Notes under the pieces: generated by a model
What the model was told of the DNA's origin: nothing
The model's input: the letters and a program-made list of their open reading frames with translations, nothing else
Databases searched by the model: none
In this document: one piece after another, positions 8,801 to 42,800 of the stretch
How positions within the stretch are numbered: position 1 is the first letter of the stretch
How the letters are laid out: each line of letters begins with the position of its first letter
Made by a program: the position numbers and the translations under genes
Source: Octopus sinensis
Taxonomy: Eukaryota
DNA: 64,000 nt
Assembly (NCBI RefSeq): GCF_006345805.1
Contig: NC_043000.1
Location: forward strand, 64,728,001-64,792,000
Reading direction: 5' to 3'

Positions 8801-11800
8801 CCCAGGCAAAATGCTTAACAGCATTTTGTCTGTCTCTACGTTATGAGTTCAAATTCCACCTAAGTCAACTTTACCTTTCATCCTCTCAGGGTCAATAAAA
8901 TAAGCACCAGTTGAGCACTGGGGTTGATGTAACTGACTCAGCCCCTCCCCTGAAATTGCCTGCCTTGTGCCAAAATTTGAAACCAATATTTTCATACTCT
9001 GTTATAAGCTAATTGTTATATTAAAGAGGTTTTACAGTTGTGTGATGATCCCATCTTTAGTTTATAATCATTATAAAAGTCCTACATATTGATCATTCTA
9101 TTACTTTGATCTCAGTTGGATATTTTAAGGGTTTAAAATAATTTTAACACATAAAAATGCCTGACATGCTGAAGGGATTTAAAAGCATTGCAAAATCAGT
9201 GATGGTATCATTCATTGTAAGACTTTGTTTCAAGTACACATATGTTAGAAGTCACTGAGCTTGTTGTTACCAGGTTTGTGAGGAGAAAGCAAATAGGGTT
9301 GACATTTGAATAGAAAAGTGAGATTTTACAGCATTCGGATTGTGATCAGAAGATATCAAAGACTGAAAAAGTAACAGTGTCTAACATCAATAAAAGAAGA
9401 CCAGGGATTAAGAAAGTTATCAACCAAGTCTCATTTCATGCATTAAAAAGTTTACCAAAGTCAGGGAAGTATGGATGCTATGAGTGGTAAGGAAAATCCT
9501 ATACCAACATTTCCTCCAGTTTCATCAACAAAATTGTTTATGGGTTGTGACTTTTCATAGAGTAGTATAAAACACAATATGAAGTCAATAATTTGATGAA
9601 TCTTCATCAAATGTTATGGTTGGCAAAAATACCTCAAGCAACAAAGCCAAATATTTTCTTAGCAAAATAATAATAATAATAATGAAATTATTGTATAGTG
9701 CTCAGGTGCACCACAACTTGTCAGAAAGTGCATATAAAGTACATGCAGTAATGTAGACCAACTTCTACCCCAAAGAATCATTTACATAAAACCAATAAGT
9801 GCCAAAATCTATGAACTTATGCAGATACAAATGCATTCTTTGTAATTACACCATGCTTCTTTGGATCTCCAATTCCATATTTTTTTTTATTTAAACAGAG
9901 AATGGTAATTTATTTGTAACATGAATTTTTAAGTAATATCTAATGTAAGTATACATTTTATCAATTCAATGATAGGAACTTTGTAAAGAGACACTTTATG
10001 TAATTATGTTGAATGTCTTCCTTTTGTATATGATCAGGCCAGTTATCCAAAATGAATACTCCCTTCCTGTCTCCTTCAGATAATTGAGCTCTAACCATTT
10101 AGAGTTCATAATTGGTGAGGACCTAATGACTAAGGATGTAAATCTTAACAACAAATCATAAATTTATATTTTCAAAAACATCACTTACTTTTCTGAATAT
10201 GGAAAGCTAATATCTATATTCTTTTTGCATGTAATATGAGCTGACAAATCAGCTTTTAAAAATGGAGCTGCAAATAAAAAAAGAAAGAAAAGAAATTATA
10301 AAAATACAGAAAATTACTTTTTTAAAAATAATTGTGAAACTGAAGTAAAAAAGCTTTTAATAGACACATAAAAAAAAGTTGAACTACTAATCTATCAACT
10401 CTCTATATATAACACAGTATTTCTGTAAATGGAGAGCTACTTATCTGGAGGATGGCAACAAGTTATGACACATTAGACAGCCTGTTGATAAGTAGTAAAT
10501 CATGACAATACACAGATATTGTTTTGAGCTGAGTGGGGGTGCTAGATTCCCTTGTTCAAAAATATAAGGACACAGATCATGTCATATAGCCAGCTGGAGA
10601 CGATGTCTCCTGGGGCTAAATTACAGCAACATTTGTCCTAAACTAGGACTGTCATGTTATGTTGGCAAATAATCTTTACTCCAAAGTACTGTTGCTGAAT
10701 ATCTCTTGTTGTGAGATTTACAAATAGTAATTTTCTAATATGACAGAAATAGTTTGTAAATTAGAGTTAAAAAACAAACTGAGAAATTAGCATTATGATT
10801 GTTCAAATTTCTCATATTTCTTGCTACAACAATAGCATCAACATTAATGTGAGTAATAGTGTAAAATAAAAGTTAGTTGAATCAAATCTAGTACTTAACA
10901 GGTAAGTTTAGCAGAGGACTGCATATTTTTTAATAGTAAATATAATCAGCTGAATGAACCCCAGTGCTTGATTAGTAAATTTAGCAGAGGGCCACATATT
11001 TTGTGAGCAATAATGTACATAGTCAATTGAATCAAAACCCAGAAGCTCACTGGTAAGTATTTTTTGTCAACTCCAGTGAAATTTGAACATAGAACATCAA
11101 GGTTCATAACTAAACACTGTTAAGGTACTCTGTTGTTTCTGCTATCTAAGTCTTTTCTAACAGATTAACATTGCATATCCACTAGATTATAATTATCTAA
11201 TTAGTGTATGTACACTCCAGAAGTATCCATACACATTATAATTCTTATACCTATGTAAAAACCCCTGCCCTTGGCTCAGTGAGAGAGGTCTGGTTTCTAG
11301 CAACAGTAACATTTCATAGCACAACTTTTATCCTTCCCCTAATTCCAGTCCTGCCACCTGCACCTTGCTCTTAGTGAAAATCATTGTCCAGTTTAATATC
11401 ATAATCTGAACTTTGGTAGAGTCCATTCTATTGCAAATATTTAGTGCAGATATTCAGTTTCTCACCAAGAATCATGAGCACTGTGCTTGCACTTTGGACT
11501 ACAAACATATTCCCTACAAAAAAGCAACAAAAAAAACAAAACAAAACAAAACATCACCCTTGATGCTATGATTAATGTAATTAACTATTTTCAGGATATA
11601 ACTCCTTAAGCATTTAAAACCAGCCATCTCTCTCTCTATCCGCTTAATCTAAGTCGACTCTCGGTCACTCGTTGGGTCAGTGTCCTCCAGTCAGTTCTAT
11701 CCTGAACTGACTGGGATAGAACCAGCCATAACCAGTTGAAATATTCTGTTTTCAAACTGGCTAAATGTGGCCTATCACACCAATCATACATTATTCTAAA

Positions 11801-16510: not shown

Positions 16511-18035
16511 TTGTTCCCCCAACATCGCTTAGCGGTTTGGCAAAAGAGACCGACAGAATAAGTACTAGGCTTACAAAGAATAAGTCCTGGAGTCAATTTT
16601 CTTGACTAAAGGCAGTGCTCCAGCATGGCCACAGTCAAATGACTGAAACAAGTAAAAGAGTAAAGAGTATATAGGCAAAGGCACAGCTGTGTGGTTCAGG
16701 AACTCAATTTGCAACCATGTGGTCTTGCTGCATGGCACCTGTGGGCAAATGTTTTCTACTATAGCCCCGGGTTGACCAAAGACTTATGAGTGGTTTTAGT
16801 AGATTGAAACTATGTTGTAGCCTCTGTGTGTGTGTGTCAGTATCTGTCTCCCTACACCACTCGACATTTTAAGTAGTGATCCAGCATGGTTGCAGTCCAA
16901 TGACTGAAACAAGATAAGAGATACATCATACAATATATCCTTTTTTGAACATAGTGGAGTTAATCTGAGAGCGATATGGCTGCTATTTCTAACAGATTGA
17001 ATGACCACATGAGATTCCCTAGTAATGGTGTGTTACATTTGAGGTTGATTTTGGCTTTCAACTTAGCTTGTTCATTTATGCAGATTTATTCAGTATACAT
17101 TCTTTTCAAAGATACAATTACAATTTTAAAAAATAACAGGTGATAACAAATACAAATTTAATGCAGTTTTACTTTCTCCAACTAAAATAAAATTAAGTCT
17201 TTGCACATGGTATTTACTATGTCACTAATTTATGTCAATGGCCCATTTGAATTACTCCCCTTAGATCATTTTATTTATTAAAATAAAAAATGCAAATTAT
17301 AATTCTTTTTCTATGTGTAAATATCTTTGTCAATTGATCAATGTAAGCTTATACTATACTGAAGAGGTCTAATACACCAAAATAAGTCTATAATTGTGTC
17401 CTTGCTGACAAAGATCAGACTTTCCTTCCCTTAAACATGTAAATTAAATCTGAAAGATTAATCTTTTTTCTGTTTTTGTTTTGAAAGCAGTAAATAAATG
17501 CTAACACGTCATTGCTTTCTTTTCCCAACCAAGGGAGGAATTTTGGTTAAGTGTCGGTTACTTTGCAACCATTTGGTTTTGAATTATGTCACAGTGCAGC
17601 ATCTTGGGAAAAATGTCTTTACTATAGCCCTGAGTTGACCAATGCCTTATAAGTAAATTTGGTAGACAGAAACTATGTGGAAGCTCACAGTGTGTGTGTG
17701 TATATATTCTTATTCTTTTACTTGTATCAGTCATTTTACTGCAGCCATGCTGGAGCACTACCTTGAAGGGTTTTAGTCAAAGAAATTGACCCCAGGACTT
17801 CTTCTTTGTAAGCCTAGGACTTATTGTATCTGTTTTTTTTTTTTGCCAAACTACTAAGTTACAGAGATGTAAACACACAAACATTGGTTGTCAAGTGAAG
17901 GTGAGGGGGCAAACACAGACACACACATATATACATACATATATATATATTATACATACACACATATACACATGCACACACACACACACATACATACATA
18001 CATACATATACACATGCACACACACATATATACAT

Positions 18036-18066
<31 letters not shown>

Positions 18067-21000
18067 CACGATGGACTTTCAGTTTGTCTACCAAATCCAC
18101 TCACAAGGCTTTGGTTGGCCCGAGGTTGTAGTAGAGGACACTTGCCTAAGGTACCATGCAACCACTTAGTTGGGAAGCAAGCTTCTTATTACACACCCAC
18201 ACCTGCACCTATATATATGAGTGTGTTCCCTCCCCACTTGACACCTGTTGGTTTGTTTACATATCCCATAACTTAGCAGTTTTGCGTAAGAAACCAACAA
18301 AAGTACCAGAGCCAAAAAAAATAAAAACGTAAGCATGGGATTGAATGTTCAATTAAAATCCTTGAAGATAGAGTCTCAGGTTGGCCACAGTCCAGTTATA
18401 GAAACAAATAAAAGAAACAACATATTGCACATCGCCCCCATGGATTTTATAAAGTATAGTCAATTTAAGACAAGGGACGTAATTCACGTCCAGTTTTAAT
18501 CAGATGATTAACAATCAGTGACAGAGTTAAAATCATTAAGTGATACAAGTAATTTTAATCTTTAAGCAAGAATACTGAAATGATATATATATTGTTTATT
18601 CTTTTTACTTTTATGTTTTTATTCTAGCATGAATATATTGTTGAATATATTCATGAATAAATTGTTACATATACTGAAGCACTGTTTTATAGTCAGATGC
18701 CCTTCTTGTTGCAAGCCCTTGCCTGTTTTCCAAGTAAGGGATCTCTTACTGCACACATATTTGAAGGTTTGAAGTGAGAAGATGATTTGTTAACAAGAGA
18801 TATGGTACCAACACTACTTGTAGCTCATGAATTATGTGGTGTGCAAACATAAATAAACACACAAACACGCACGTTTTTGTGTGTGTGTGTGTGTGTCTGT
18901 TAGTTTATATTTGTGAAAAAATTCTGTTGTGTAACTATGTATGTATATTTTAATAACAATTTGACCTGGCTCCATCTGACAAAATTTGTGGGTATGTAAG
19001 ACACATTCATCTAATCAGAAATCTGATGAGATGGGTGTGTCCTATGCACTCATGACATTTATGGAGCTAAGTCAAACTCATTAAAAAATATATGTACCTC
19101 TTGTCCACTCATGTATTTGTTTTATGCATTTTGAGCCAAAAGCCTTGTAACTTGCATTTAAAAGTAAAAGAGTATAAATAATGGACTGGATACATTTATT
19201 TGTGCATTATAAACTTATACCTGTTTTTGATATGCGTTTTGGGTGCATTCATGGTTTAATTTACTGCAGTTGGTGTGTTGGACTGACAACAATAGCATTC
19301 ACTACATTTCCAATCAATCAATTAATCGGCTGAGTTAACTGAACCATGAATGCTCTTGAAATGCATATAAGAAACAGCAGCTGCAAGTCTATATTTTACA
19401 AATAAATGCATAAAGCCTATTATTTGTCTTTTTCTTAAGTATCACTTTGTGAATACATACTATATTAACTAAGTAATGTAAAAATGGATTTCCTATGTCA
19501 AATGGTGAAGGACTTTGACTTCAGATTACCTGGATTTCAATGCCAAGCACCAAAAAGTATTTTGCTTAGATTACTAATCTCTTATTAATGACTCTTTGTT
19601 CAGATAAATTCTTGATTTACTGAAATTATCTCTGCTTTCCAGAGCAGGTAAACTAATTTTTTGTGGTGGAAATTGGTACCAACTCCAAACGAGAAGGGGA
19701 GATAATCTCATGAATCAGGAATTCCCCAAAATTAACAAGTTGACATACATGCTGTTATGGGAAAGTCAGTATGATTGTCTGAAAAAATATACGTTACATG
19801 TCTATCTATCACACACACGATGAGCTTCTTTCAGTTTCTATCTACCAAATCTACTCACAAAGTTTTGGTTGGTTTAGGTCTATACTAAAAGATTTTTGTC
19901 CAAAGTATCATGCAGTGGAACTGAACCCAAAAGCACATGGTTGGGAGGTGAACTGCTTTGTCACATAGCTATACTTGTGCCTAATCATATAAATAAACAA
20001 ATAAAAGCCCAAAACAGATTAAAATTATATGCGCACCTTTGTTGCATGTAGAACTAAAAAATACGTTGGAAGCCGGAACAAGCTTTGCCTGTAATGTAAG
20101 GAAATAAAAGTAAACGAACCTTGTTTAAATATCAGCAAGTATATCAAAATATGAAATGATATTCAAAATTAGTATACATTTTTGTAATAATCATAAGAAC
20201 ATCTACAGAAAATGGCAAAAAGGAGAGACATTCTAGATTATCTGGTCATCCCATGAGTTCTGTCCGATTTTACCTTCTTTAAAATTTAATAGTATTTTAG
20301 AATGTCTAATGGAATCAACAATTATTTTTATGTATTTGTGTACATTTAAACTAGTTAAATATTATTTTACAGAATAATAGAATTAAAATTTCTTTGATTA
20401 AAACCCTTTCTAACATGGAAGTATCCAAAGAACATTTAAGGCACATAATGCTTTATGAGTACAAAAAAGGAAACTCTGCTGCTGAAGTGACTTGAAACAT
20501 ACACTCAGTTTATGGGAAAGAATGCTTGAATGAAAGAACTTGCAGAAGATGGTTTGCAAAATTCAGAAGTGGATATTTCAGCCTTGAAGATGAAGATCAA
20601 ACAGGACATCCAGTTGAGTTTGATGATAAGCTCCTTGAAGAAAATCCTACACTATCAGTTGAAGAATTGGCAATAAAGCTTAGTTCAAACCATAGCAACT
20701 GTTCATTGTCATCTTCAACAATTTGGAAAGGGTCCTAAACTTGAAAAATGGGTGTCTCATGAATTGTCCAAAAGCAACCGTAAATCCTGAGTTTGACATC
20801 TGCTCTTCTTGCCAGTCTCACGAACTCATTTCACCCTTTTTGGATAGATTTGTGACTGGTGATGGAAAATGGATCTTCTATTGAAATGTTAAATGTCGTA
20901 AACAGTGACTTGGTAAAAGAGAAAAAGCTCAACCACAACCAAGAAGGGAACTTCATGGAAAAAAGGTTCTTCTATCTGGTGGGATTGCAAAGGAGTAATT

Positions 21001-24000
21001 CACTTTGAATTGTTATCACCTTATGCAACAATCAATGCTCAAATCTACTGTCAGCAATTAGAATGTTTGAACCAAGCTTTGAAGAAAAAAAGGCCCGTTT
21101 TAGTGAATCGAAAAGGAGTGATGTTTCATCAGGACAATTTGCGACCCCACACTGCAAAGATCACATCACAGAAGATCGAAGAGCTTGGTTGGGAAAAAAT
21201 TCCTCATCCACCTTATTCTCCCGACCTTGCTCCTTCAGACTACCATTTGTTTCGTAGTTTACAGAATCATTTGGGGGACATAACTTTTGCAAGCCAGGAG
21301 GAGGTCGAAACTGACATTTCAGAGTTCTTTGCTTTGAAAGCAAAAAAGTTTTACATTGATGGGATTAAAAAGTTTGTAAATAAATGGAAGGAAGTCATAG
21401 ATAATCAGGGAAAGTACATTGATGATTATATTTCAATCAAATATAACATTTGATCACTTGTTTTCTTTATTCAAAATTCGGACAGAACTTATGGGATGAC
21501 CTGATATTTTCATAAACTGACATTCCAAAAGTTATACACATTAGAGATAGCAGCACTACAAGGCACTATACAAGTAAACTGCTGTATATATTTATATCAG
21601 AAAATATAAAACCAAAAATCAAACATGGAACAAAACACACAGAGCTGCACTTGGTAGATCAATGAAGCCATACAATATAAACTGATAAATATTAATTTAA
21701 ATTGTATAGGATGGTGCACAACTTCTGGATAACTTTGTCTGATTTCATATAAATAGAGATATCATTCACTACAGCAATGGATCTGGTGCCTTTCATAGGC
21801 ATGTTAAAACAATAGCAAAACTGGGATCTGTAAATATTACGATATTCTCACATGGCTTTCTTAACATCGGACGTTTTTATGTATGTTTCCCAGGATTAAC
21901 ATAATTCTTTAGTCAGATAAAAATAACTCTAATTACCAGGATTGTAAAATATAAAATAGAAAGAAATTAAGTCAAAACTGAAGTAGAAGTATTGTAATCA
22001 TCATCATCATCATTTAATGTCCATTGTCCATGCTGGCATGGGTTGGACAGTTTGACCAGGGTTGGTAAGCTGGAAGGCTGCACCAGACTCCAGTCTGATT
22101 TGGCAAGGTTTTCTACGGCTGGATGCCCCTCCTAATACCAACATTTACATTTATCTTATGCGCCTTTAAAAAAGTAAAGAGTTATGTTATAAATCTATAA
22201 AAGCTACTTCTCAGTCTAACAGATCAGTCAAAATGTGGAAACAGTATTGTAATACTGTAGCAGTTATATATTGATGTAGTAATAACTTACTGAAATCAAG
22301 CTTTCGCTCATGTTTTTCAAAGTTTTCTTTGGAGGAGAGATATCTGTCAATAAAATTGTTTTAATTTAATATGCAGTTGGCACATGAAAGCAGTGTTGTG
22401 AATTAAACATTTATATCAGTTCAAGAATGTTCCAAACATTTGAATTGGTCTAAATATTTGTTTTTATTAGATTTTCTATAAATGTGATTGTAACAGAGTA
22501 AAGAGAATAAACATTTTATTTTAGATTTTTATTGAAATGGAAAAAAAAAACCCCTCTCAAAAGCAAAAGAACAACCAAACAACACACACACAAAACTGCT
22601 TTAGAGTACAACTAAAATCTCACTGAGCAGTGTCCATTGTGTCATCAACTAAGACATTGTTATGAAGTGGTTTAAAGATGGCTAAATGACAATGGATTTC
22701 ACTTCAGCTATGAAAGCTAACAAAAAACCTATCAATTATGGTATTTAGTCATTATTTTTTACATTTGCAGTCCAAATAATTTTGCTTATCATCCTTCTGT
22801 GATCAATAAAATAAAGTACCAGTCAATTATTGGGGATCAGTTTAATTAACTATATTCTCCTGATGAATGCAAGTCCTTCTAGCAATATTGATTTCAAATT
22901 TTAGTACAAGGCCAGTAAGTTCAGGGAAGTGGGTAAATTGGTTACAGTGATCTCAGTACCTAACTGGTACTTATGTTATTGACTGACTCTGAAAGGATGA
23001 AAGGCAAAGTTGACCTTGGCGGAAATTCAACTCAGAATGTGAAGACAGCAAGCTGGCAGAATCATTAGCAATATTAGAAATCATTTAAAGTAATACACTG
23101 TTTATAGAGGTCGCCTGATCTGTGGTGTATAATGTAGAACCAAGAGGACTGAATCTTTGAAAAGTAAGTATCTCTGGGGGTGACATTAATACAGCACAGG
23201 CAGTTTGTTTATTTTGGTATCATTGGTCATAGATTTCCATGAGGACAATAATTAGTTCATTTTATTTCTGACAGTCAGAGTATAAAGGGAACATTTAGCC
23301 ATGTGACAGGAACTTCTTGTAAAAGAATGTTTTTATTATATTTTTTCTCTCAACAAATTTATGTCTTATATTGATAAACCAACAAATGGTACACATGATA
23401 TGGTCGAAAACACTTGCCCAAAAGTATTGTGCAACTAGGTGGTTCTGGTTTGAATCTAGAGCCACAAAGTTGTGAAGTAAACTCTTCCACCACACAGCCA
23501 CATATACAAATCATAGACCAATAGGTAAGCATGCTCTATAGTCAGCTAATGGTGTATAATTTACCAGCCATATACATAATAACTGTATGTAGAACTATTA
23601 AAATTGTATATGAGAACAGCTCTAGTTCTCTAGTTCACAAGAATTACAACTAGTTTCAAATGAAAGATTACTTTTGTGTTATAATTTATATACAATGTAG
23701 TGTGCTTAATCTGAGATTAAGAATCCTTATGTGGAAAGGAAACAAGGGTAGGATTATCATTAGCAATGAAACTGTATTATGCTGAAAGGCTTATTCCAGC
23801 AAGAATGCTTAACACACTGTAGTTCATATAACAATAATTTTGTTCAAGAGTTCTAGAAATAATTTTTTCATGGTAAAATGATGCTCACACATACACACAG
23901 GAAAGTGAATGAAAAGACAATAATTAATTAATCATACTTACAGAGATGAAATACTGTGTTACTATCTTCTAAGTTGTCTCTCACAAACTGATGTAAAGCA

Positions 24001-32431: not shown

Positions 32432-35400
32432 CTGGAAATTCCTACGAGACAGCTTACTGAGTGCCACAGACCAAGTCTGTGGCTGGTGCAAAGTCCCTTC
32501 CAGACCTAGAGTTACGTGGTGGTAGAATAGTACGGTAGACAAAGCCGTTAGGGCAAAGAAACAGGCCTGGAAGGATGGGGGTAGCAGGGAAGGGTACCAT
32601 GTAGCCAGAAGAGAGGCTGGGTGGCAGGTATACATAGCCAAGAGCGAAGCGGAAAAGAAGTTTGCCGATGTCCAGAGACGTGAGGACAAGAACTGAGGTA
32701 TTTCGGATTGCAAGACTGTGTGAAAGAAAATTGTGATGTCACAGGAGAGAAATGTGTTCGAATGGATGATGGTGCATTTGCTTTTAGTGCTTGGAGAAGC
32801 CATTATGAAAGACTGCTGAATGTGGAGAATGAATGGGAGGAGGAGAGCCTGCCAAGTGTTGACCCAGTAGAGGGACCAGCTATCCGTATAGATAGCTCCC
32901 TAGCAGACAAAGCAATTAGAGGTATGAAGCCAGGAAAAGCCCCTAGCCCATCAGGAATCACTGCTGAGATGCTTAAAACATCAGGTGGTACGGGCTATGG
33001 CCTAGTCACCCGCATTGTAAACCAGGTTGTTCATGATGGAGTCATACCCAACAACTGGCGTAGCAGTACCATAGTCAACTGCTACAAGGGTAAAGGTGAT
33101 GCTCTAGATATAAATAACTATAGGGGTATCAAACTGCTGGATCAGATAATGAAGGTTATGGAGAGGGTCATAGCCCAACTTATTAGGGAGAGAGTCAACT
33201 TGGATGAGATGCAGTTCGGTTTTGTGCTGGGTAGAAGCACCACTGATGCCATATTCCTGGCTCAACAACTGCAGGAGAGATACCTAGCCAAAGATAAACC
33301 CCTATACTTAGCTTTTGTGGACTTGGCGAAAGCCTTTGACAGGGTCCCCTGATCCCTTATCTGGTGGGCGATGCGGAAACTGGAGATTGACGAATGGTTA
33401 ATAAGGGCTGTACAGGCCCTTTACAGAGAGGCTGTTAGTAAGGTTAGGATTGGCAATGAGTACAGTGAAGAATTCCGGGTAGAAGTTGGCGTCCACCAAG
33501 GCTCAGACCTCAGTCCCCTTCTATTCATCATAATCCTCCAGGCAATAACAGAGGAATTCAAGACGGGTTGCCCCTGGGAGCTCCTCTATGCTGATGACCT
33601 AGCCCTCATAGCAGAATCACTACCAGAACTAGAGAAGAAATTTCATGTGTGAAAGCTAGGTTTAGAATCAAAAGGCCTTAGAGTCAATGTAGCAAAGTCC
33701 AAAGTTCTAGTAAGTAGGAAGGCAAACTCACCACACACCCCTTCAGATAGGTGGCCCTGCTTAATCTGTAGAAAAGGTGTAGGTAAACTCCATAAGATGT
33801 ACCCAGTGTAAGCTATGGACACATAAAAGGTGCAGCAACATCAAAGAAAAATTAACTGAGAAGATAGCTTTCGTGTGCAGCAGATGCACAGGGGCAATAG
33901 ACACCATTGATACTCAGACAACAGATTCCATTACACTCCTGAGGAAGAAACTAGTAGTTGATAGTTTCTGCTACCTAGGTGATCAAGTTAGTAGCGGGGG
34001 GTGGATGCTCAGAGAGTGTTACCACTAGAATAAGAATAGCCTGGGCAAAGTTTAGGAAGCTTCTACCCCTACTGGCAACAAAGGTGGTTTTACATGTTAC
34101 TGCACGGGTGCTTTTACATTTTGCTGCATGGGCGCTTTTACAAGTCACGGCATGGACACTTAACGTGTCACCACATGGGCATTTCTACATGTTGCCACAC
34201 AGGTGCTATTATGTGTTACCACACAGGTGCTATTATATGCTGTCGCATGGGCACTTTTAGGTGACATTGCACAGGCACTTTTACTTGGCAACTCCAAATC
34301 ATCAAATCTTATTTTACAAAACGAATTTTCACAGTAACCAGAGCCCTAAGAATATTGAATTGCAAACAAATTAAGCAATACACTCTCTTACTCAGGGTGC
34401 TTTTTAAAAACTCTCAGTTGTCGGAGTTGGACAAGTTTTAGTGCTCAGAAAAGAAATAACAGAAAAAGAAAACTTCAAATAATTACTAAACCTTTTAAAT
34501 AGAGTAAATAAACTAAACAATAACAAAAGTTATTTCAATAAAGAGGAAAAAAAAACTTACCTGAAAATCATCACTTTCTTTATCACTAAAAACAATAAAA
34601 AAAAACTGTAGAATAAAAATATCGAGTAAGTTAAAAATACCTATGTCAACATGAGTGAAAAAACTTTTGTAAATTTTGAATATGGGCATATGAATTGGAG
34701 CATTCATTTTTTGGTATGATAATCTTTCAAGAAACTTATTTATAGCTAGACACACAAGAAATATTGTGATTTATCAATGATAAGAAAAAAAAAAATTTAA
34801 GATTTGAATTACATAACTTTGTTGTCATTGATCCTACCAAATTTATCACTATAAAGTGAAAGAAAGTAAAAAACAAAAAGGAATGGGGAGCAGTTTATTT
34901 GGAAATTTAGATTCAAAATAAAAATGAGCATGATACCTATTAGAAAATGTTACTGAAGATAATCAATGCAAGTGCCCAGAGAAATTCAGAACCCAAATTA
35001 AACATGTAATAGAGACCTAAAGACCCAATATGATAATAATATAAAAAGCATAGCTGAGTGGTTAAGAAACCAGCTTTCCAACTATGTGGTTTCAGGGTCA
35101 ATCCCACCATGCAGCACTTTAGGCATATGTCATTTACTGCAGCCTTATGCTGATCAAAAAAGAAAATACCTAAAAGCCAATACAGAAGTGGAACATGAAA
35201 TAAAATACATATGAAAATATGTGCAAATCATTTATTAAAACAAATCTAAGCTAATAAATTTTTTATAATGTTTTTTCGTGTCTTGGAACCACTTACTGTT
35301 TTTGTGGAAGCGCGTGACTTAGTGGGTAGGGTGTTGGACTTATGATCGTAACATTGTGGTTTCAATCCCTGGACCAGGCAACACGTGTTCTTGAGCAAAA

Positions 35401-36741
35401 CACTTCATTTCACACTGCTCTAGTTCACTCATCTGGCAAAAATGAATAATCCTGCGACAGACTGACGACCTGTCCCAGTGGGGAATTTATATGCCATGAA
35501 ACTGGAAAGCTGGCTCTTGTGAATCGGTACGACTCGAGAAGGTAACTTTAACTTACCTATGCTTGTCATATGAAAAAGTTAATATTATTTCTCATAAAGC
35601 CTCAGGTGGCAGAGAAGATGATACTTGTATCTTTCCCAATGGTATTAGAATTGCAAGTGAAGTAATTCCAAATGGGGAGGGAAGAAGACAGGGAACCAGT
35701 ACTGGTTTGCTGGGAACTTGCTGCTGTTACATGATATCAGTGTTGTAATAATTAATGATATACCTACAGTATTGATTTCTTAGAAAAGATCTAAATATCT
35801 TGTCTCATGTTCCTCTTAATTTATTATATTGCTATCAGTAAAAGGGTAAAGACCCCACTTTGTTCATGAATGACCATGGGATTGCACCTAGAAAGTTATC
35901 CTCTGAGGCACAAATCTAGGTAAGGTTTTTTTAATGGAAGACCAGCAGTCATCCATGCATATCAGCCTCCCCTCTCCACACCACCGATGTTATCTAAAGG
36001 ATGATATCCAAAGGCTGATACAGCTTGACATCAGTGATATCACAACACATTTCAAGAATTGAGAAAATTGGAGTTACATGAAATAAAGCATCTTACTTAA
36101 GAACACGACACACAGCTGGTTTGGGAATCAAACTCACTACCTCATGATTGTGAGCCCGAATCTCTAACCACTGAACCCAGCAGGGCTAAGACATGAACCT
36201 ATATAATAATTTTCCATCAAGAGGTCCAAATGACCTCTCTTGATGGAAAATTATTGCTAACAAATAGAAAAATATTTGAATTATCAAATAAAGAGATAGA
36301 CGTCATAATAGTAAATAGTAAGAACATTGCAGAGTGGATTGTCAATGATCACATACATACAAGACACTGTTTCTGTCCCTCCATTATATTTTAGCCTCTT
36401 ACCACTTGGCATAAAGCCACTCCGTCTCTACTACCCACTCAGTAAAAGAAGCTTTTTGTTTTGCAAGTTACCTCACTAGTGCTATGAAAAAAAAAGTGGT
36501 TGGTGTTAAAGAAGGTCATCTAGCCATAGAAACTATCAAAACAGACATAAAGCTTGATACAGTCCTCCAGTGTTTTGGGTCCTATTGAACCTTCCAACCC
36601 ATGTCAGCATGGAAGGTAGATGTTAAATGATAATTATATATCATCATCATCATTTAACATCTGTTTCATGTACTGGCATGGATTGGATGGTTCTCCCTCT
36701 TCCACAACTTCCTCCCACTTTAAGTGACTGGCACTTTATAT

Positions 36742-36814
<73 letters not shown>

Positions 36815-39800
36815 TATATATATATAAAGAAAGAGAGGAGGGTTCTCCACCTGTTGAATGATGGGGATTCAGTTGTCTAATCAATCAAATTACTTGCTCT
36901 TTATATGTATGTGAATCTGAGGTTAGCGTAAGTAGCTGACCATAGACACATACATTTAGCATAAATAAATCTTCAGCAGAATCAGAGAGACATTGTTAAT
37001 GATATTTTACATATATCTGTTGTCAAGCACTTGCAACCAAGTATGTCTTTAAAACTACTACCCCATATTTAAAAGTTAGAACCAAATCTACACTTACCTC
37101 TCTTGAGAAGAATTTCTGTCTCGCAACTGAAAGAAGACATTATTGAAATAATTAAAAATAAAAGAAAATAGTATTAAAATTGGGAAAAAGAAAAACTATT
37201 AGTTACAAGATAGTAGTTTATTTTTTAAAAAAGTGTTAATTCCTTCAACTAAAATTATTCTCTTTGCTTTTATTTTTTCTGTTATTGTTACAGTGGTAAA
37301 TTTAGCATCCACATTTAAATGCAGGTTTGATTTGGAAAGGTCTTCAACACAGGCCCTTCCATGTATTTTAATTTAATATCATTTATCATCAGTGAGGCCT
37401 AACATTCTGACCTTACTACATATTCTTCAATATTTTTCTTGTTGGTGTACTGCAGTTTTTCAACATCCACTGTTTTTATCTGTTCTCAGAGACATGCAAT
37501 ACTAATTACTAACATATTTGTCTGGAAGTCTGGAAGAAATGGTTCCAGGGAGAGAGATAACTGGTAGCACAAAAGGAAATACAATATGTGTAGTTCTGCT
37601 CTCATAATTACAGCAACATCTCTGTGTAGAAGTTAATCAAGCTGAGGTGAGTTAAAATTATAACAGTTCAGACTATCTGGGAAGAAACATTTCTTACATA
37701 TTTACATCTACTTCAGATATAAATATTAATTCCTAGAGATAGAATTCAAACTTACTGCAAGTCATTTGTGTTTTTCTGGGAGAAATATTTTATCATTTCC
37801 TATCAAGAATATATACTAGATCAATGGAGTTCACATGTAGACTATAAACCACCAATCACATGGCTTGAGTTGCCATTCAACCTGGACTCTGGTTTTGATG
37901 CCAATTATGAGCTAATTTTGGTTGTTTGTATGCAAAGCTGGTTGTGTATTTTGTTTGATATGAGAATATGTGCAGGTACATGTATGTATAAAAAGAAGAA
38001 AAAAATCAAGTTTCATAATTACTTTTTGCTGCTGTTGTTGTTGTTGTTGAAGTGTAGACGTTCTCTGTTGATCATGCCACATCATTTCCTGTGAAGAAAT
38101 AAGATTTTCTTCATGCCCTGAGGATTGCACATTTGGTTGAGTCTCTGATACAGAACTATGTTCCCCTTGAGATATTTCCATCATACAATCAGAGGAGCTA
38201 TCACCAACATCCCTAACAGTTTCCATTTCCTTTTCAGTTTTTCTTTCTCTTAAATGTATGTCTGCTTTCGCTTCCACTTTTATCTTTTTGACAGCTTCCC
38301 TGTTGGTGTCCTGTACAATTTCATGATCAGTAGTGCCTTCAGTTTCTCCATGAACTAGCCTACACAGGAAATACAGTGAAGTCAGTTTTAGATTAGAACA
38401 TAAAATAACTAATCCTAAATAACAAAATTTCTTTCTGTCAAACATATGCAGACAATATCTTCATCATCATCTAAAGACCATTTTCCATAGTGGCATGGGT
38501 TGGATGGCTTGACAGAAACTGGCAGGGCTAAGGGCCACACCAAATGCCATAGTCTGTTTTGGTTTAGTTTCTACAGCTGGATGCCCTTAGTAACACCAAC
38601 CACTTTACAGAGTGTACTGGGTGCTTTTTACGTGGCACCAGCACTCACCCACACCAATGCTTTTTACATGGCATTTTGATTTTAGGATTTTAATTCTGTT
38701 CTGGTGGCTATGTCTTCTTGAGTATAGTATGTCAAAATGCTAAATTTTATAATAAAATTCTTATTATTCTTAAGCTACATGTTAGGTAGATTTGAAGCAT
38801 AAATATAATGTGAAAGTATCCGTGAGTCAAGAAGCTAGAATTCTTAATTATATCATTTAGTTCAGAGCATAGTTTATTGCAGAAGAAATTATAAACTATT
38901 AGTAGTATAGCACCTTTAATTTTACAGCCTAGTAATATTTGCAAATATGCATTTATAAAAAATACCTTATATGTAAAAGTTAGTATAAAACCCACACTAA
39001 CCTCTCATTGGCAAAATTTCTTTCTTGGAGCTGGAAGACACAATATTGTAATAATTAAAAATAAACAGAAAAATATAAAAAAAAAAAGAGGGTAAAAATG
39101 GAATTTAGTAGTTTTATAGAAAAGATAATTCCTTTAATTAGAACAAACTAGTCATCTTTGGTATTGCTGCTACAGTGGTAATTTTAACAATTAGGAAAGG
39201 TCTTCAACATAGCACTCTTCCATGAATTTCAATTTTATACTGTGCATCATCTGTGAGGACTAATGTTCTGACCTTACTACATATTCTCCACTACTTCTCG
39301 TCTGTGTTCTGCAGGTTTTTTTCTACATCCACCAAGAAACATGCAATGCAGATACCAGCACAATTGTCTGGATTTTATACAGAGTAAGTCAAAAGTAGCA
39401 CTGAGTTTCTGGGAAGTCATGCTTTTGTTGTTTTGCAGATTATTAATTAGTTTTGAAAGTTACTGAATCTGGATCATGTATCATTAATAACTCAACTTGC
39501 AGAACAAGAGTTAGGAATCAAAAGCATCTCCCAGTCATACATATCAATCCCAAAACAAGAATTGGGCACTACTTTTGACTCACACTGTATTTAAAGAAAT
39601 TCAGTAGATGTTTATCATTATCTCAATTCACTCGTCCTCAACTTTACTCAAAAGTTAGTTAACATTACTAATCTAACAATTTGCTCCTTTATAATTGCTG
39701 AAGCTCTTCCTCCTATTCAGTGCCTGTTTCTAATGTCTAAAGATGCAGTTCATAGTTTGAACTATTGTAATCTTAACAATAAGTCAGCTCAGATATTGAA

Positions 39801-42800
39801 ATAAGGGCTTGTTTAGCATACCTGACAACTGCTGTACAGAGATGTTATGAAAGAAACTAAGAAACAGATACAGCATCTTGCTATATTCAGGAGGATTCAT
39901 TCTTGGTTCCCTTCACTATTTTACTTTTTATTCAAGTAAAAAGAGTATATTTTGCACAGGGATATTATAGCACACTTTCTAAAGAAGTTAGGTTTAAAAA
40001 AATAACCTAATTGACTTACAGACCATCACTTTTAATATTACAGCCATTGCGTTTCATAACATACTGTCACTTTACATCTGGTTTTTATGCTGGTATGAGA
40101 TGGATGGGTCATAATGGTCTGAGTGAGTTTTTATTCAGAGTTACATGTCTCCAAATGGGTCAAAGACTATGTGTCACTTGTACATTCTATTTTTGGTAGA
40201 GTTTCAATGGAAAGATACTCTTCCTAGCAACCACCACTCAACAATATACTGGAGGCATTTTAATGTAACACTAATAGTAGTAAAGCCACTTTGTATCCAG
40301 TAAGGTTGAAGAGTTCTCATTACTATATGTTATCTGTATTCAATGTGATCAAGATGATGAATGAGAGAAAGGGAGAGGGCAAAACAGAAGAACCAGAATG
40401 AGAGGGTGAATGAAGAGAAAATATGTTGAGACAAACAGTGAATGGGATGAGAGGGTGATAGAGAGAAGAATGGCAGTTAGATGTTTGCTGGTAAGAGAGA
40501 GCTAATCAAAATAGATAAGATATTGGATTATCTGTTCACGGGTCATGGATTGAAACTATCTTGCATGTTTCACGGTGGAACATTTTAATATCTTTTATTA
40601 GAAATATGTACTGGATCAATGAGATTCAGACTACAGACCACTAGTCAAAGGCTTTTAACTTGCCATTGAATTTAGGCCCTGGTTCTGAATTTGCTTGTAT
40701 GCTTATGTCTATGTGCAAGCGGATACATACATACTTTTCGTTGCTGCTGTTGTTTAAATTCTCTCTGTTGATCACGCTGTGCCACATCCTGTGGAGAAGT
40801 AAGATGCCCTGAGATCTGCATATTTGGTTGGGCCGCTGAAACAGGTTTAGGTGCCTCTTGAGATATTTCCATCATATCAGAAGAACTATCACCAACATCC
40901 CTAACAGCTTGCAATTCTCTTTCATTTTTCTCTTCTCTTAAATGCTTGGCTGCTATCTGATCTAATTTCATCTTCTTGGCAGTTTCTGCATCAATCTTCT
41001 GTATAATTTGAGCATAGGTAACATCATCAACTTGTCTGTGAACTAGCCTAGACAGAAAAAAAACAATAAGGTTAATTGTAAAGTAAAGTATAAAATCATT
41101 ACCCCTTTAAGGTTCATAAAATAATTGTTCTATCAGTCAAATTTGTTGGGACAAACAACAAAATTCTCTATCTGTCAAACATACATACAATATCTTTTAC
41201 TTGTTTCAATCATTAGACTGCAGCCATGCTGGAGCACCCAAGTACACGTTTTTTTATTTAAAATCTGGTATTTATTCTATCAGTCTCTTGTTGCCAAACC
41301 ACTTAGTTATGAAGATGTAAACAAACCAACACTGGTTGTCAAATGGTGGTGACACACATACACGGTGACTTTGTTTTGCATGGTAGATTTTTTATAATAC
41401 ATAACATTTAAAGCAAGTATACTATGTCATAAAGAGGATTAGAGTTATTTCATGTCAATATTTATAATAATTTTAAGGTGGCAAGCTGCCATGATCATTA
41501 GCATGCTGGGCAGAATGCTAAATAGCATTTCGCCTGTCTTCAGGTTCTGAATTCAGATTCTGCCAATGTCGACTTTGCATTTCATCCTTTTGGGGTCAAT
41601 AAAATAAGTACCAGTTGAGTACTGGGGTTGAAGCAATCAACTTTATCCTTCCTTGAAATTGTTGGCCTTGTGTCAAAATTTGAGATCAATATTTATAATA
41701 ATTTTAACAGCTTCAAATATAAATCCTATTTAATTACCGTATAACTGCTTTGCCGCCAGTAAGTCCTAATTTCCGTAAGGGTGTGGTTTTCAAAGCAATT
41801 TCTCCAATAATCTAAACAGTAAGAAAAATTTAAATACAAATTATAATCATTAAAATGTATTTCTTAAAGGAAAGAGTTTGAATCAATTGTGTGGTAATAT
41901 CAAAGAAATAATATTCTATTATTCCTTTACCAGTTTTAGTCATTGGACTGTGGTCATGTTGAAGCACAATCTTCTAAGATTTTAGTTGATTTTATCAACC
42001 CCAGTATTTATTTTATTTATCTTGAAGGAAGTCCATTATTTACTTTTGATGGATATTTGTGCTCATCTTGTTTGTTGTTAACACGTTTCGGCTGATATAT
42101 TCTCCAGCCTTCATCAGGTGTTTTGGGGAAATTTCGAACCTGGGTTCTCATTCCTAAGGTATGTTTCGATGTTATTATTATAATTAGTATTACTACTATT
42201 CAGGTCACTGCCTGAATAATAACAACAACAACATCGAAAAATACCTTAGGAATGGGAACCCAGGTTCGAAATAAATACTTTGTGGTATTTGTTGTGGCTC
42301 TTTACATTCTGAACTCAAATCCCACCGAGGTCAGAGAAAATACACTACCAGTAGAGTACTGGAGTCAAGGGTATCAACTAACCCTCCCCACAAAATTGTT
42401 GGCCTTGTCCTATGTTAGAAACAGTTATTATTATTATTATTATATTATTATTATTATTATTATCATCAATGTGGTGAGCTGGCAGAAACATGCCAGACAA
42501 AATACTTAGTAGCAGGTGATCTGTCTTTATGCCCCAAGTTCAAATTCCACTGAGACTGACTTAACTTTACATCCTTTCAAGGTTGATGAAATAAGTACCA
42601 GTTGAGCACAAAATTTGAGGTCTTGACCCTATAAAAGAAAGGGTCATTATTTGACTAAAGCAAAAAAGGTGGTGTTGTGGACGAGGCTGAAAGGACTGAA
42701 GACAAACACTTTCCTCTTTGGCCAAGCCCTCATCAACTTTTTCAGGTTCCACTTGAAAAAGGAAAGTGAGCATGAATGTGGCAAAAATGGCTCATGTGAA

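What the first reader, a model, noticed from the sequence alone, without database searches (positions are those of the whole stretch)
37098..41047. Tandem duplication of a symmetric two-exon module inside TUG/ASPSCR1
Seen: exons 40735-41047 + 39002-39030 (342 nt) and 38023-38359 + 37098-37126 (366 nt) are paralogs. Both start G CTA GTT CA(C/T), share VRDVGDSSSD, MMEISQ, QPN.Q.SGH, DQQR and polyQ-K, and end in a 29-nt exon finishing GAG AG. Each module is phase 2-2 and a multiple of 3, so both, either or neither can be included in frame. About half the residues are identical by eye, and both copies keep open frames and splice sites. Known: human TUG as I recall it has no such repeat between UBL2 and UBX. 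Inference: a lineage-specific duplication lengthening the disordered linker and allowing isoform switching.
Basis: partly seen in the sequence, partly recalled or inferred. Interest (0 to 1): 0.7.

Follow-up and report, generated by a model that had tools for sequence, protein, structure and literature searches.

The report
Duplicated exon pair in octopus TUG
The octopus gene for the vesicle-tethering protein TUG/ASPSCR1 carries an old tandem copy of a two-exon block, and every annotated transcript includes both copies, so this is an ordinary internal gene duplication with no sign so far of isoform switching.

Summary
On the minus strand, exons 41047-40735 + 39030-39002 (342 nt) and 38359-38023 + 37126-37098 (366 nt) are paralogues. 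They share 59/113 identical residues, about 30 SD above shuffles. All splice sites are canonical, both modules are phase 2-2, and each length is a multiple of 3.

The duplication is genomic, because the introns are also homologous (unit A 41196-38942, unit B 38461-37038). The gene is TUG/ASPSCR1, and the window matches Octopus sinensis.

Both modules are present and collinear in O. bimaculoides, and both are in the O. vulgaris protein models. The Argonauta hians locus has one module. No other of 134 TUG homologues has such a repeat.

All 11 annotated Octopus isoforms contain both modules, so isoform switching is unsupported. It could not be tested with reads.

Copy A keeps the ancestral end of UBL2 and a conserved long helix, and it is under purifying selection. 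Copy B has diverged there and changes at the intron rate, but it keeps its frame, its splice sites and a nearly identical 55-58-nt core.

The most likely effect is a longer central disordered region with a doubled acidic Ser-rich motif. This is a known kind of event and of modest interest.

The parts
41738..41811 (-). Upstream constitutive exon (74 nt) encoding IIGEIALKTTPLRKLGLTGGKAVI + CG. It holds the conserved LGLTGG motif and the first half of the last UBL2 strand, and it ends in phase 2.
   Evidence: alignment with P0001
38942..41196 (-). Duplicated genomic unit A (exon A1, intron, exon A2 and flanks), collinear with unit B.
   Evidence: blastn of the two segments; intron flank z-scores 10-34
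40735..41047 (-). Exon A1, 313 nt: LVHRQVDDVTYAQ...QQQQRK. It is the ancestral-like copy, carrying the strand end, the conserved helix, the acidic Ser-rich motif and a Q-rich tail.
39031..40734 (-). Intron within module A (phase 0, 1704 nt). It contains a 1.24-kb stretch (40568-39332) with no counterpart in unit B, which is also present in O. bimaculoides.
39002..39030 (-). Exon A2, 29 nt (LQERNFANE + AG).
   Evidence: the same 29-nt exon exists in Argonauta (L001 10633-10661)
38360..39001 (-). Intron between modules A and B (642 nt). It includes a SINE-like repeat at 38645-38455 whose 3' end abuts the start of unit B.
37038..38461 (-). Duplicated genomic unit B.
38023..38359 (-). Exon B1, 337 nt: LVHGETEGTTDHEI...QQQQQQQQK. 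It is the diverged copy.
37127..38022 (-). Intron within module B (phase 0, 896 nt).
37098..37126 (-). Exon B2, 29 nt (LRDRNSSQE + AG), with a consensus donor GAG|gtaagt.
34561..34585 (-). Next constitutive exon (25 nt, completes S then DKESDDFQ).
40855..40909 (-). Near-identical core in copy A (VRDVGDSSSD-MMEISQ).
38164..38221 (-). Near-identical core in copy B (VRDVGDSSSDCMMEISQ).
41192..41363 (-). SINE-like repeat, of a different family from the one at 38645-38455, whose 3' end abuts the start of unit A.

Best explanation
A 2-3 kb piece of the TUG/ASPSCR1 gene was duplicated in tandem in an ancestor of the genus Octopus. The piece carried a large exon, a phase-0 intron and a 29-nt exon. The event came after the split from the Argonauta lineage and well before the O. 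bimaculoides / O. sinensis split. Because the block is phase 2-2 and a multiple of 3, both copies are spliced in series into the mRNA. The protein therefore carries a 114 + 122-residue tandem repeat directly after UBL2. Copy A kept the ancestral job: it completes the last UBL2 strand and forms the conserved helix that follows. Copy B lost the conserved helix residues and drifts almost neutrally, but it stays an open, spliceable insert and keeps the acidic Ser-rich core (VRDVGDSSSDxMMEISQ), QPNxQxSGH, DQQR and a polyQ run. The net effect is inferred, not shown: a central disordered region about 120 residues longer, with two copies of its short motifs. In mouse TUG this region targets the protein to the ERGIC. 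Shown: the anatomy, the genomic nature of the duplication, its distribution across species, the rates of change, and inclusion of both modules in all annotated models. Inferred: constitutive inclusion in real mRNA, and the functional effect.
For: Paralogy is 59/113 identical residues, about 30 SD above shuffles. The introns are collinear and homologous, with z-scores of 10-34 in four intronic flanks, while A-Argonauta and B-Argonauta comparisons are at noise in three of the four flanks and weaker in the fourth. The whole structure is collinear with O. bimaculoides at 91-94% identity. The Argonauta locus has one module with the same large-exon plus 29-nt-exon layout. A split self-alignment scan of 134 TUG homologues gives strong internal repeats only in the 11 Octopus proteins (237-256) and in Argonauta (207, due to a minisatellite); all others score <=84. 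A phmmer search of exon A1 against 1.84 billion representatives finds only octopod sequences, each with one matched stretch. All 11 annotated isoforms include both modules, and the O. vulgaris annotation used Iso-Seq and RNA-seq (PMC10700109). Between O. sinensis and O. bimaculoides, exon A is 97.4% identical against 94.1% for introns (p=0.0097), and exon B is 92.7%, no different from introns (p=0.29). B has dN/dS 0.44 (one-sided p=0.05). All A/B and B/B indels are in frame, and all splice sites are kept in both species. Only about 5% of simulated neutral copies with 65 substitutions stay open. AF2 predicts a strand at 167-178 and a helix at 180-223 with pLDDT >90, which is the N-terminal half of copy A, and gives copy B pLDDT <50. 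Mouse IDR1 (residues 183-321) is necessary and sufficient for ERGIC targeting (PMC12218103).
Against: No transcript reads were examined, so inclusion of B rests on gene models, and a gene predictor would accept any frame-preserving exon pair with good splice sites. B changes at the intron rate between species, so constraint on its sequence is weak. Its low AF2 confidence may only reflect a three-sequence alignment. The functional effect is extrapolated from mouse. A naive clock on 68% intron identity gives an age that fits awkwardly with a post-Argonauta origin.
Confidence: 0.7

Rival explanations
1. One reading: the two modules are alternative cassettes, or a mutually exclusive pair, so isoforms with A only, B only, both or neither are produced and tune the linker.
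For: Both modules are phase 2-2 and multiples of 3, so every combination stays in frame. With A skipped, the strand AVIR|LVH is still completed by B. Tandem exon duplications are often linked to mutually exclusive splicing (PMC9013439).
Against: None of the 11 annotated isoforms from three species and at least two annotation pipelines skips either module, although those pipelines did record alternative N and C termini at this locus. No shorter Octopus TUG appeared in the protein search.
Confidence: 0.15
2. Module B is a decaying pseudo-exon pair or neutral filler. Either it is spliced out in vivo and included only by gene predictors, or it is included but has no sequence-specific role.
For: Exon B is 92.7% identical between O. 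sinensis and O. bimaculoides, no more conserved than introns at 94.1%. Paralogue dN/dS is 0.78-0.97. B lost the residues conserved in the helix of all other TUGs. AF2 confidence for B is low.
Against: The frame is open in three species, every indel is in frame, and all four splice sites are kept in both compared genomes. Orthologue dN/dS is 0.44. A 55-58-nt core stays 93% identical to A, against 72% for the rest.
Confidence: 0.12
3. The duplication predates the Octopus-Argonauta split, and Argonauta later lost one copy by unequal crossing-over.
For: Paralogous intron identity is only about 68%, several-fold the O. sinensis / O. bimaculoides divergence. In the N-terminal conserved stretch, aligned by eye, the informative residues do not resolve the tree. 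A matches Argonauta alone at 13 sites and B at 5.
Against: The intronic flanks of A and B are clearly homologous to each other (z 10-34) but not to Argonauta (z <=2), except at the acceptor tract. A and B share insertions and motifs that Argonauta lacks.
Confidence: 0.08
4. Assembly artefact, i.e. a collapsed or expanded haplotype.
For: None.
Against: The copies differ by about 29% in exons and about 32% in introns. The same two-copy structure is in the independent O. bimaculoides assembly, and both modules are in the O. vulgaris protein models.
Confidence: 0.01

Closest known systems
Tandem exon duplications in animal genes (reviewed in PMC9013439; human substitution events in PMC9741552)
   Same: Adjacent homologous exons on the same strand and in the same phase, generated by intragenic segmental duplication. 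The introns still show homology.
   Different: The unit here is a two-exon block, and both copies appear to be used in series, giving an internal protein repeat. The best-studied cases are mutually exclusive.
Central intrinsically disordered region IDR1 of mouse TUG (residues 183-321; PMC12218103)
   Same: Same position in the protein, after UBL2 and before the UBX region. It is charged, Ser- and Gln-rich and mostly predicted disordered.
   Different: There is no detectable sequence similarity beyond the first residues. Mouse IDR1 has no internal duplication. Its ERGIC-targeting role has not been tested for the octopus sequence.
Minisatellite expansion in the same exon of Argonauta hians TUG (L001 9290-9600, 27 nt x 11.7, NVTQMEQQQ)
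   Same: It lengthens the same linker, in frame, by about 100 residues, in a sister octopod lineage.
   Different: The mechanism is slippage of a 27-nt unit inside one exon, not duplication of an exon-intron-exon block.

Membership tests
TUG / ASPSCR1 / UBXD9 orthologue | N-terminal TUG-UBL1 domain | tested here: met
   PF11470, E=3.5e-22, residues 9-72 of P0001, which is identical to the window's product in the exons checked
TUG / ASPSCR1 / UBXD9 orthologue | C-terminal UBX domain | tested here: met
   PF00789, E=3.4e-14, residues 488-562
TUG / ASPSCR1 / UBXD9 orthologue | Second ubiquitin-like domain with the LGLTGG motif before its middle strand (the mouse cleavage site is Gly164|Ser165) | tested here: met
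   LGLTGGKAVIR is conserved across 123 homologues. AF2 gives a strand at 167-178. The cleavage site is from PMC9556833. Cleavage itself was not tested in octopus.
Tandem intragenic (exon-block) duplication | Adjacent copies in the same orientation with significant similarity in exons | tested here: met
Tandem intragenic (exon-block) duplication | Homology extends into introns in the same order | tested here: met
Tandem intragenic (exon-block) duplication | A single-copy state in an outgroup | tested here: met
   The Argonauta hians genomic locus has one module with the same two-exon layout.
Alternatively spliced cassette or mutually exclusive exons | Transcripts or isoforms that lack one copy | tested here: not met
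   0 of 11 annotated isoforms skip a module. This tests annotation only.
Alternatively spliced cassette or mutually exclusive exons | Junction reads for skipping events | not testable with these tools
   No read-level data are available. Logan holds no full-length transcript contig for these proteins.
Functional coding exon (module B) | Purifying selection on the protein sequence between species | tested here: inconclusive
   dN/dS 0.44, p=0.05. Nucleotide divergence equals that of introns. The frame and splice sites are kept.

The most novel reading that the evidence does not exclude
Octopods lost about 100 residues of the ancestral TUG linker, including the otherwise near-universal invertebrate motif FKFPEETKG. 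Two octopod lineages then independently re-extended it to the usual ~230-275 residues: Octopus by duplicating the two-exon module, and Argonauta by a 27-nt minisatellite. This would imply selection on the length or motif valency of the ERGIC-targeting disordered region. Copy B would be kept as a spacer carrying a second VGDSSSDxMMEIS motif, and its nucleotide-identical core would be maintained by gene conversion.
Probability: 0.15. Interest if true: 0.45.

Novelty: new member of a known kind. Interest (0 to 1): 0.25.

Why it matters
It gives a clean, datable example of how a disordered region grows by duplication of an exon block. One copy stays constrained and the other drifts while remaining in frame. 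The protein's central disordered region was recently shown in mouse to be necessary and sufficient for ERGIC targeting. If linker length or motif number matters for TUG, the octopus (duplication) and argonaut (minisatellite) versions are natural variants to test. Otherwise this is an ordinary internal repeat. The RefSeq and ENA protein models already contain it, but in the searches run here I met no description of it as a repeat.

Tried and rejected
1. A second word-indexed protein search with the B1 peptide alone returned 'no candidate shares three 5-residue words', although P0001 contains the query exactly. This is a limit of the tool and says nothing about the distribution of B.
2. Self-BLASTP of the 134 homologues gave zero off-diagonal hits because enclosed HSPs are culled. 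It was replaced by split local alignments.
3. The species of the Logan contigs L003-L006 (SRR11869384 and related runs) could not be identified. The contigs carry an exon A1 orthologue 80.75% identical in DNA to the window, but they end inside intron A, so the presence of B in that octopod is unknown.
4. The Argonauta genome paper gave no divergence times. The 34 My figure comes from PMC10700109.
5. The shorter members of the decapodiform-like cluster (556-557 aa) are N-terminal truncations, not linker splice variants.
6. Rfam, tRNA and ORF scans of both strands over 36000-42000 found no other feature.
7. NAHR between flanking SINEs as the duplication mechanism is not supported. The repeats abutting the 5' ends of A and B belong to different families.
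8. Assembly artefact was rejected (see rival explanations).
Full report
**Observation.** The gene reads on the minus strand.
- A1 41047-40735: ...tctgtctag|GCTAGT ... CGAAAA|gtatgt
- A2 39030-39002: ...cttccag|CTCCAA ... TGAGAG|gttagt
- B1 38359-38023: ...cctgtgtag|GCTAGT ... CAAAAA|gtaatt
- B2 37126-37098...ctttcag|TTGCGA ... AGAGAG|gtaagt

The modules are 342 and 366 nt, i.e. 114 and 122 codons. Each enters and leaves in phase 2 and has a phase-0 internal intron. The translated copies align with 59 identical residues of 113. The local score is 251, against 38.8 +/- 7.1 for 1000 shuffles. The named shared strings are all present. All three skipping combinations stay in frame.

**The duplication is genomic.** Similarity is not confined to exons. 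Unit A (41196-38942) is collinear with unit B (38461-37038). Intron pieces are about 68% identical and exon 1 is 71.5% identical. Four intronic flanks give z-scores of 10-34 against shuffles. Intron A has a 1.24-kb stretch (40568-39332) with no counterpart in B. It is not repeated elsewhere in the window.

**Identity of the gene.**
- A spliced query returned 'tether containing UBX domain for GLUT4' proteins.
- O. sinensis isoform X3 (P0001, XP_029635484.1) is identical to the window's product through both modules. O. vulgaris differs at three residues in B. The window is therefore most likely O. sinensis.
- Pfam finds TUG-UBL1 (residues 9-72) and UBX (488-562). The modules match no Pfam family.
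- The gene spans roughly 52 kb down to 2.4 kb of the window.
- Nothing else lies on either strand of the region: no Rfam family, no tRNA, and only chance ORFs.

**Distribution.**
- The O. bimaculoides locus (L002) has both modules: A1 16973-17288, A2 18992-19020, B1 19663-19987, B2 21223-21251. The whole region is collinear with the window at 91-94% identity, including the A-specific intron stretch and the repeat between the modules.
- The Argonauta hians locus (L001) has one module with the same layout, a large exon from about 9055 and a 29-nt exon at 10633-10661. It shows no trace of a second copy.
- Its introns are not detectably homologous to those of A or B, except at the acceptor tract. 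This places the duplication after the split from the Argonauta lineage, with loss in Argonauta as a less likely alternative.
- Among 134 TUG homologues, split self-alignment gives 237-256 for the 11 Octopus proteins and 207 for Argonauta. The Argonauta score comes from a 27-nt x 11.7 minisatellite encoding NVTQMEQQQ. Everything else scores <=84.
- A phmmer search of exon A1 against 1.84 billion representatives found only Argonauta TUG and a genomic ORF from an unidentified octopod, each with one matched stretch.
[quoted passage not shown] The paralogous introns are several-fold more diverged than the orthologous ones (JC distance about 0.42 against 0.06, my calculation). The event is therefore old.

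**Isoforms.** The clusters hold O. sinensis X1-X5, two O. vulgaris models and four O. bimaculoides models. In the alignment all eleven contain both modules. They differ only in alternative N termini and C-terminal exons. No shorter Octopus TUG appeared in the search. The O. vulgaris annotation used Iso-Seq and RNA-seq. This is evidence from annotation, not from reads, so alternative use is unsupported rather than excluded.

**What the copies encode.**
- The first ~36 residues of copy A (LVHRQVDDVTYAQIIQKIDAETAKKMKLDQIAAKH) align with a stretch conserved in squid-like, bivalve, gastropod, chiton and brachiopod TUGs.
- AF2 on a 60-sequence alignment places a strand at 167-178 (GKAVIRLVHRQV) and a helix at 180-223 with pLDDT above 90. 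The rest of A is low-confidence, and there is a weak helix at 262-286.
- All of B (287-408) is below pLDDT 50. B has only three sequences supporting it in the alignment, so this says little.
- In mouse, the scissile bond Gly164|Ser165 sits at the start of that same strand (PMC9556833). The following IDR1 (183-321) is necessary and sufficient for ERGIC targeting (PMC12218103).
- The intron before each module therefore cuts the last UBL2 strand. Both copies begin with LVH, but only A keeps the conserved helix residues. B has G, T, E, G, D, H, V, K and D at conserved positions.

**Rates.** All comparisons are between O. sinensis and O. bimaculoides.

| Region | Identity | Test against introns |
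|---|---|---|
| Introns | 94.1% (3644/3872) | reference |
| Exon A | 97.4% (333/342) | Fisher p=0.0097 |
| Exon B | 92.7% (328/354) | p=0.29 |

- A and B differ from each other (p=0.005).
- For B, dN/dS is 0.44 (17 non-synonymous and 9 synonymous changes, one-sided p=0.05). For A there are too few changes to estimate it (8 and 1).
- Paralogue dN/dS is 0.78-0.97 overall and 0.34 in the central motif.
- With Argonauta as reference, A alone matches at 13 sites and B alone at 5 (p=0.10).
- B has kept an open frame in three species, and all its indels relative to A and between species are in frame. All four splice sites are kept in both genomes. Only about 5% of simulated copies with 65 random substitutions remain open.
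- A 55-58-nt core (40909-40855 in A, 38221-38164 in B) is 93% identical between paralogues, against 72% for the rest of the exon. That is as similar as A is to its orthologue in the unidentified octopod. It fits a short gene-conversion tract or nucleotide-level constraint. I could not separate the two.

**Mechanism of origin.** Both units begin exactly at the 3' end of a SINE-like repeat, but the two repeats belong to different families (41363-41192 and 38645-38455). Simple recombination between flanking repeats is therefore not supported, and the breakpoints remain unexplained.

**Likely function (inference).** The protein gains about 120 mostly disordered residues and second copies of an acidic Ser-rich motif, QPNxQxSGH, DQQR and a polyQ run, inside the region that in mouse targets TUG to the ERGIC. 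The distance from LGLTGG to the DEFF motif is 271-274 residues in Octopus, 233 in Argonauta, 225-234 in the squid-like sequences and 250-313 in other molluscs. Without the duplication or the minisatellite, the octopod linkers would be about 130-150 residues. Octopods also lack the motif F-x-F-P-[DE]-x-[TS]-[KR]-G. It is found in all other invertebrate TUGs retrieved and is absent from the three octopod loci at the DNA level. Independent re-lengthening in two lineages is suggestive, but it is not evidence of selection.

**Verdict.** This is a new example of a well-known kind of event and is of modest interest.

Noticed in passing
L001 9290-9600 (Argonauta hians TUG locus): A 27-nt minisatellite, 11.7 copies at 92% match, encodes NVTQMEQQQ repeats inside the single module's large exon. 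This is an independent in-frame lengthening of the same linker by about 100 residues.
   Followed up: partly
window minus strand between 37098 and 31181; L001; L002: The linker motif F-x-F-P-[DE]-x-[TS]-[KR]-G (FKFPEETKG) is present in 45 of the 134 retrieved TUGs: every non-octopod mollusc checked, plus brachiopod, annelid, amphioxus and hemichordate. It is absent from all Octopus and Argonauta proteins and gives no tblastn trace in the three octopod loci. It is also absent from vertebrates.
   Followed up: partly
window 40909-40855 and 38221-38164: A core of 55-58 nt is 93% identical between the two paralogous exons, with no synonymous differences in O. bimaculoides, while the rest of the exon is 72% identical. 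This points to a gene-conversion tract or nucleotide-level constraint.
   Followed up: partly
window 41363-41192, 38645-38455, 36693-36493: SINE-like repeats of two different families end exactly where units A and B begin. Another copy of the second family lies downstream of unit B, partly as an inverted pair.
   Followed up: partly
L003-L006 (Logan SRR11869384, SRR11869391, SRR11869394, SRR11869390): Genomic contigs from an unidentified octopod carry an orthologue of exon A1 and its flanks, 80.75% identical to window 41574-39460. The contigs end in intron A, so it is unknown whether that species has module B.
   Followed up: partly
window 2626-2441 (last coding exon, minus strand): An STPKPSGS-type tandem peptide repeat is longer in O. 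sinensis than in O. bimaculoides. Isoforms X4 and X5 and both O. vulgaris models read this exon in a different frame after skipping an upstream exon, giving a different C terminus without the conserved VPKWFKLG end.
   Followed up: no
window 48418-46556, 56516-55301, 28981-27576, 60505-59584: Transposon remnants lie inside and beside the gene. There are reverse-transcriptase-like ORF fragments in an intron, and two copies of a ~1.3-kb element with long ORF remnants.
   Followed up: no
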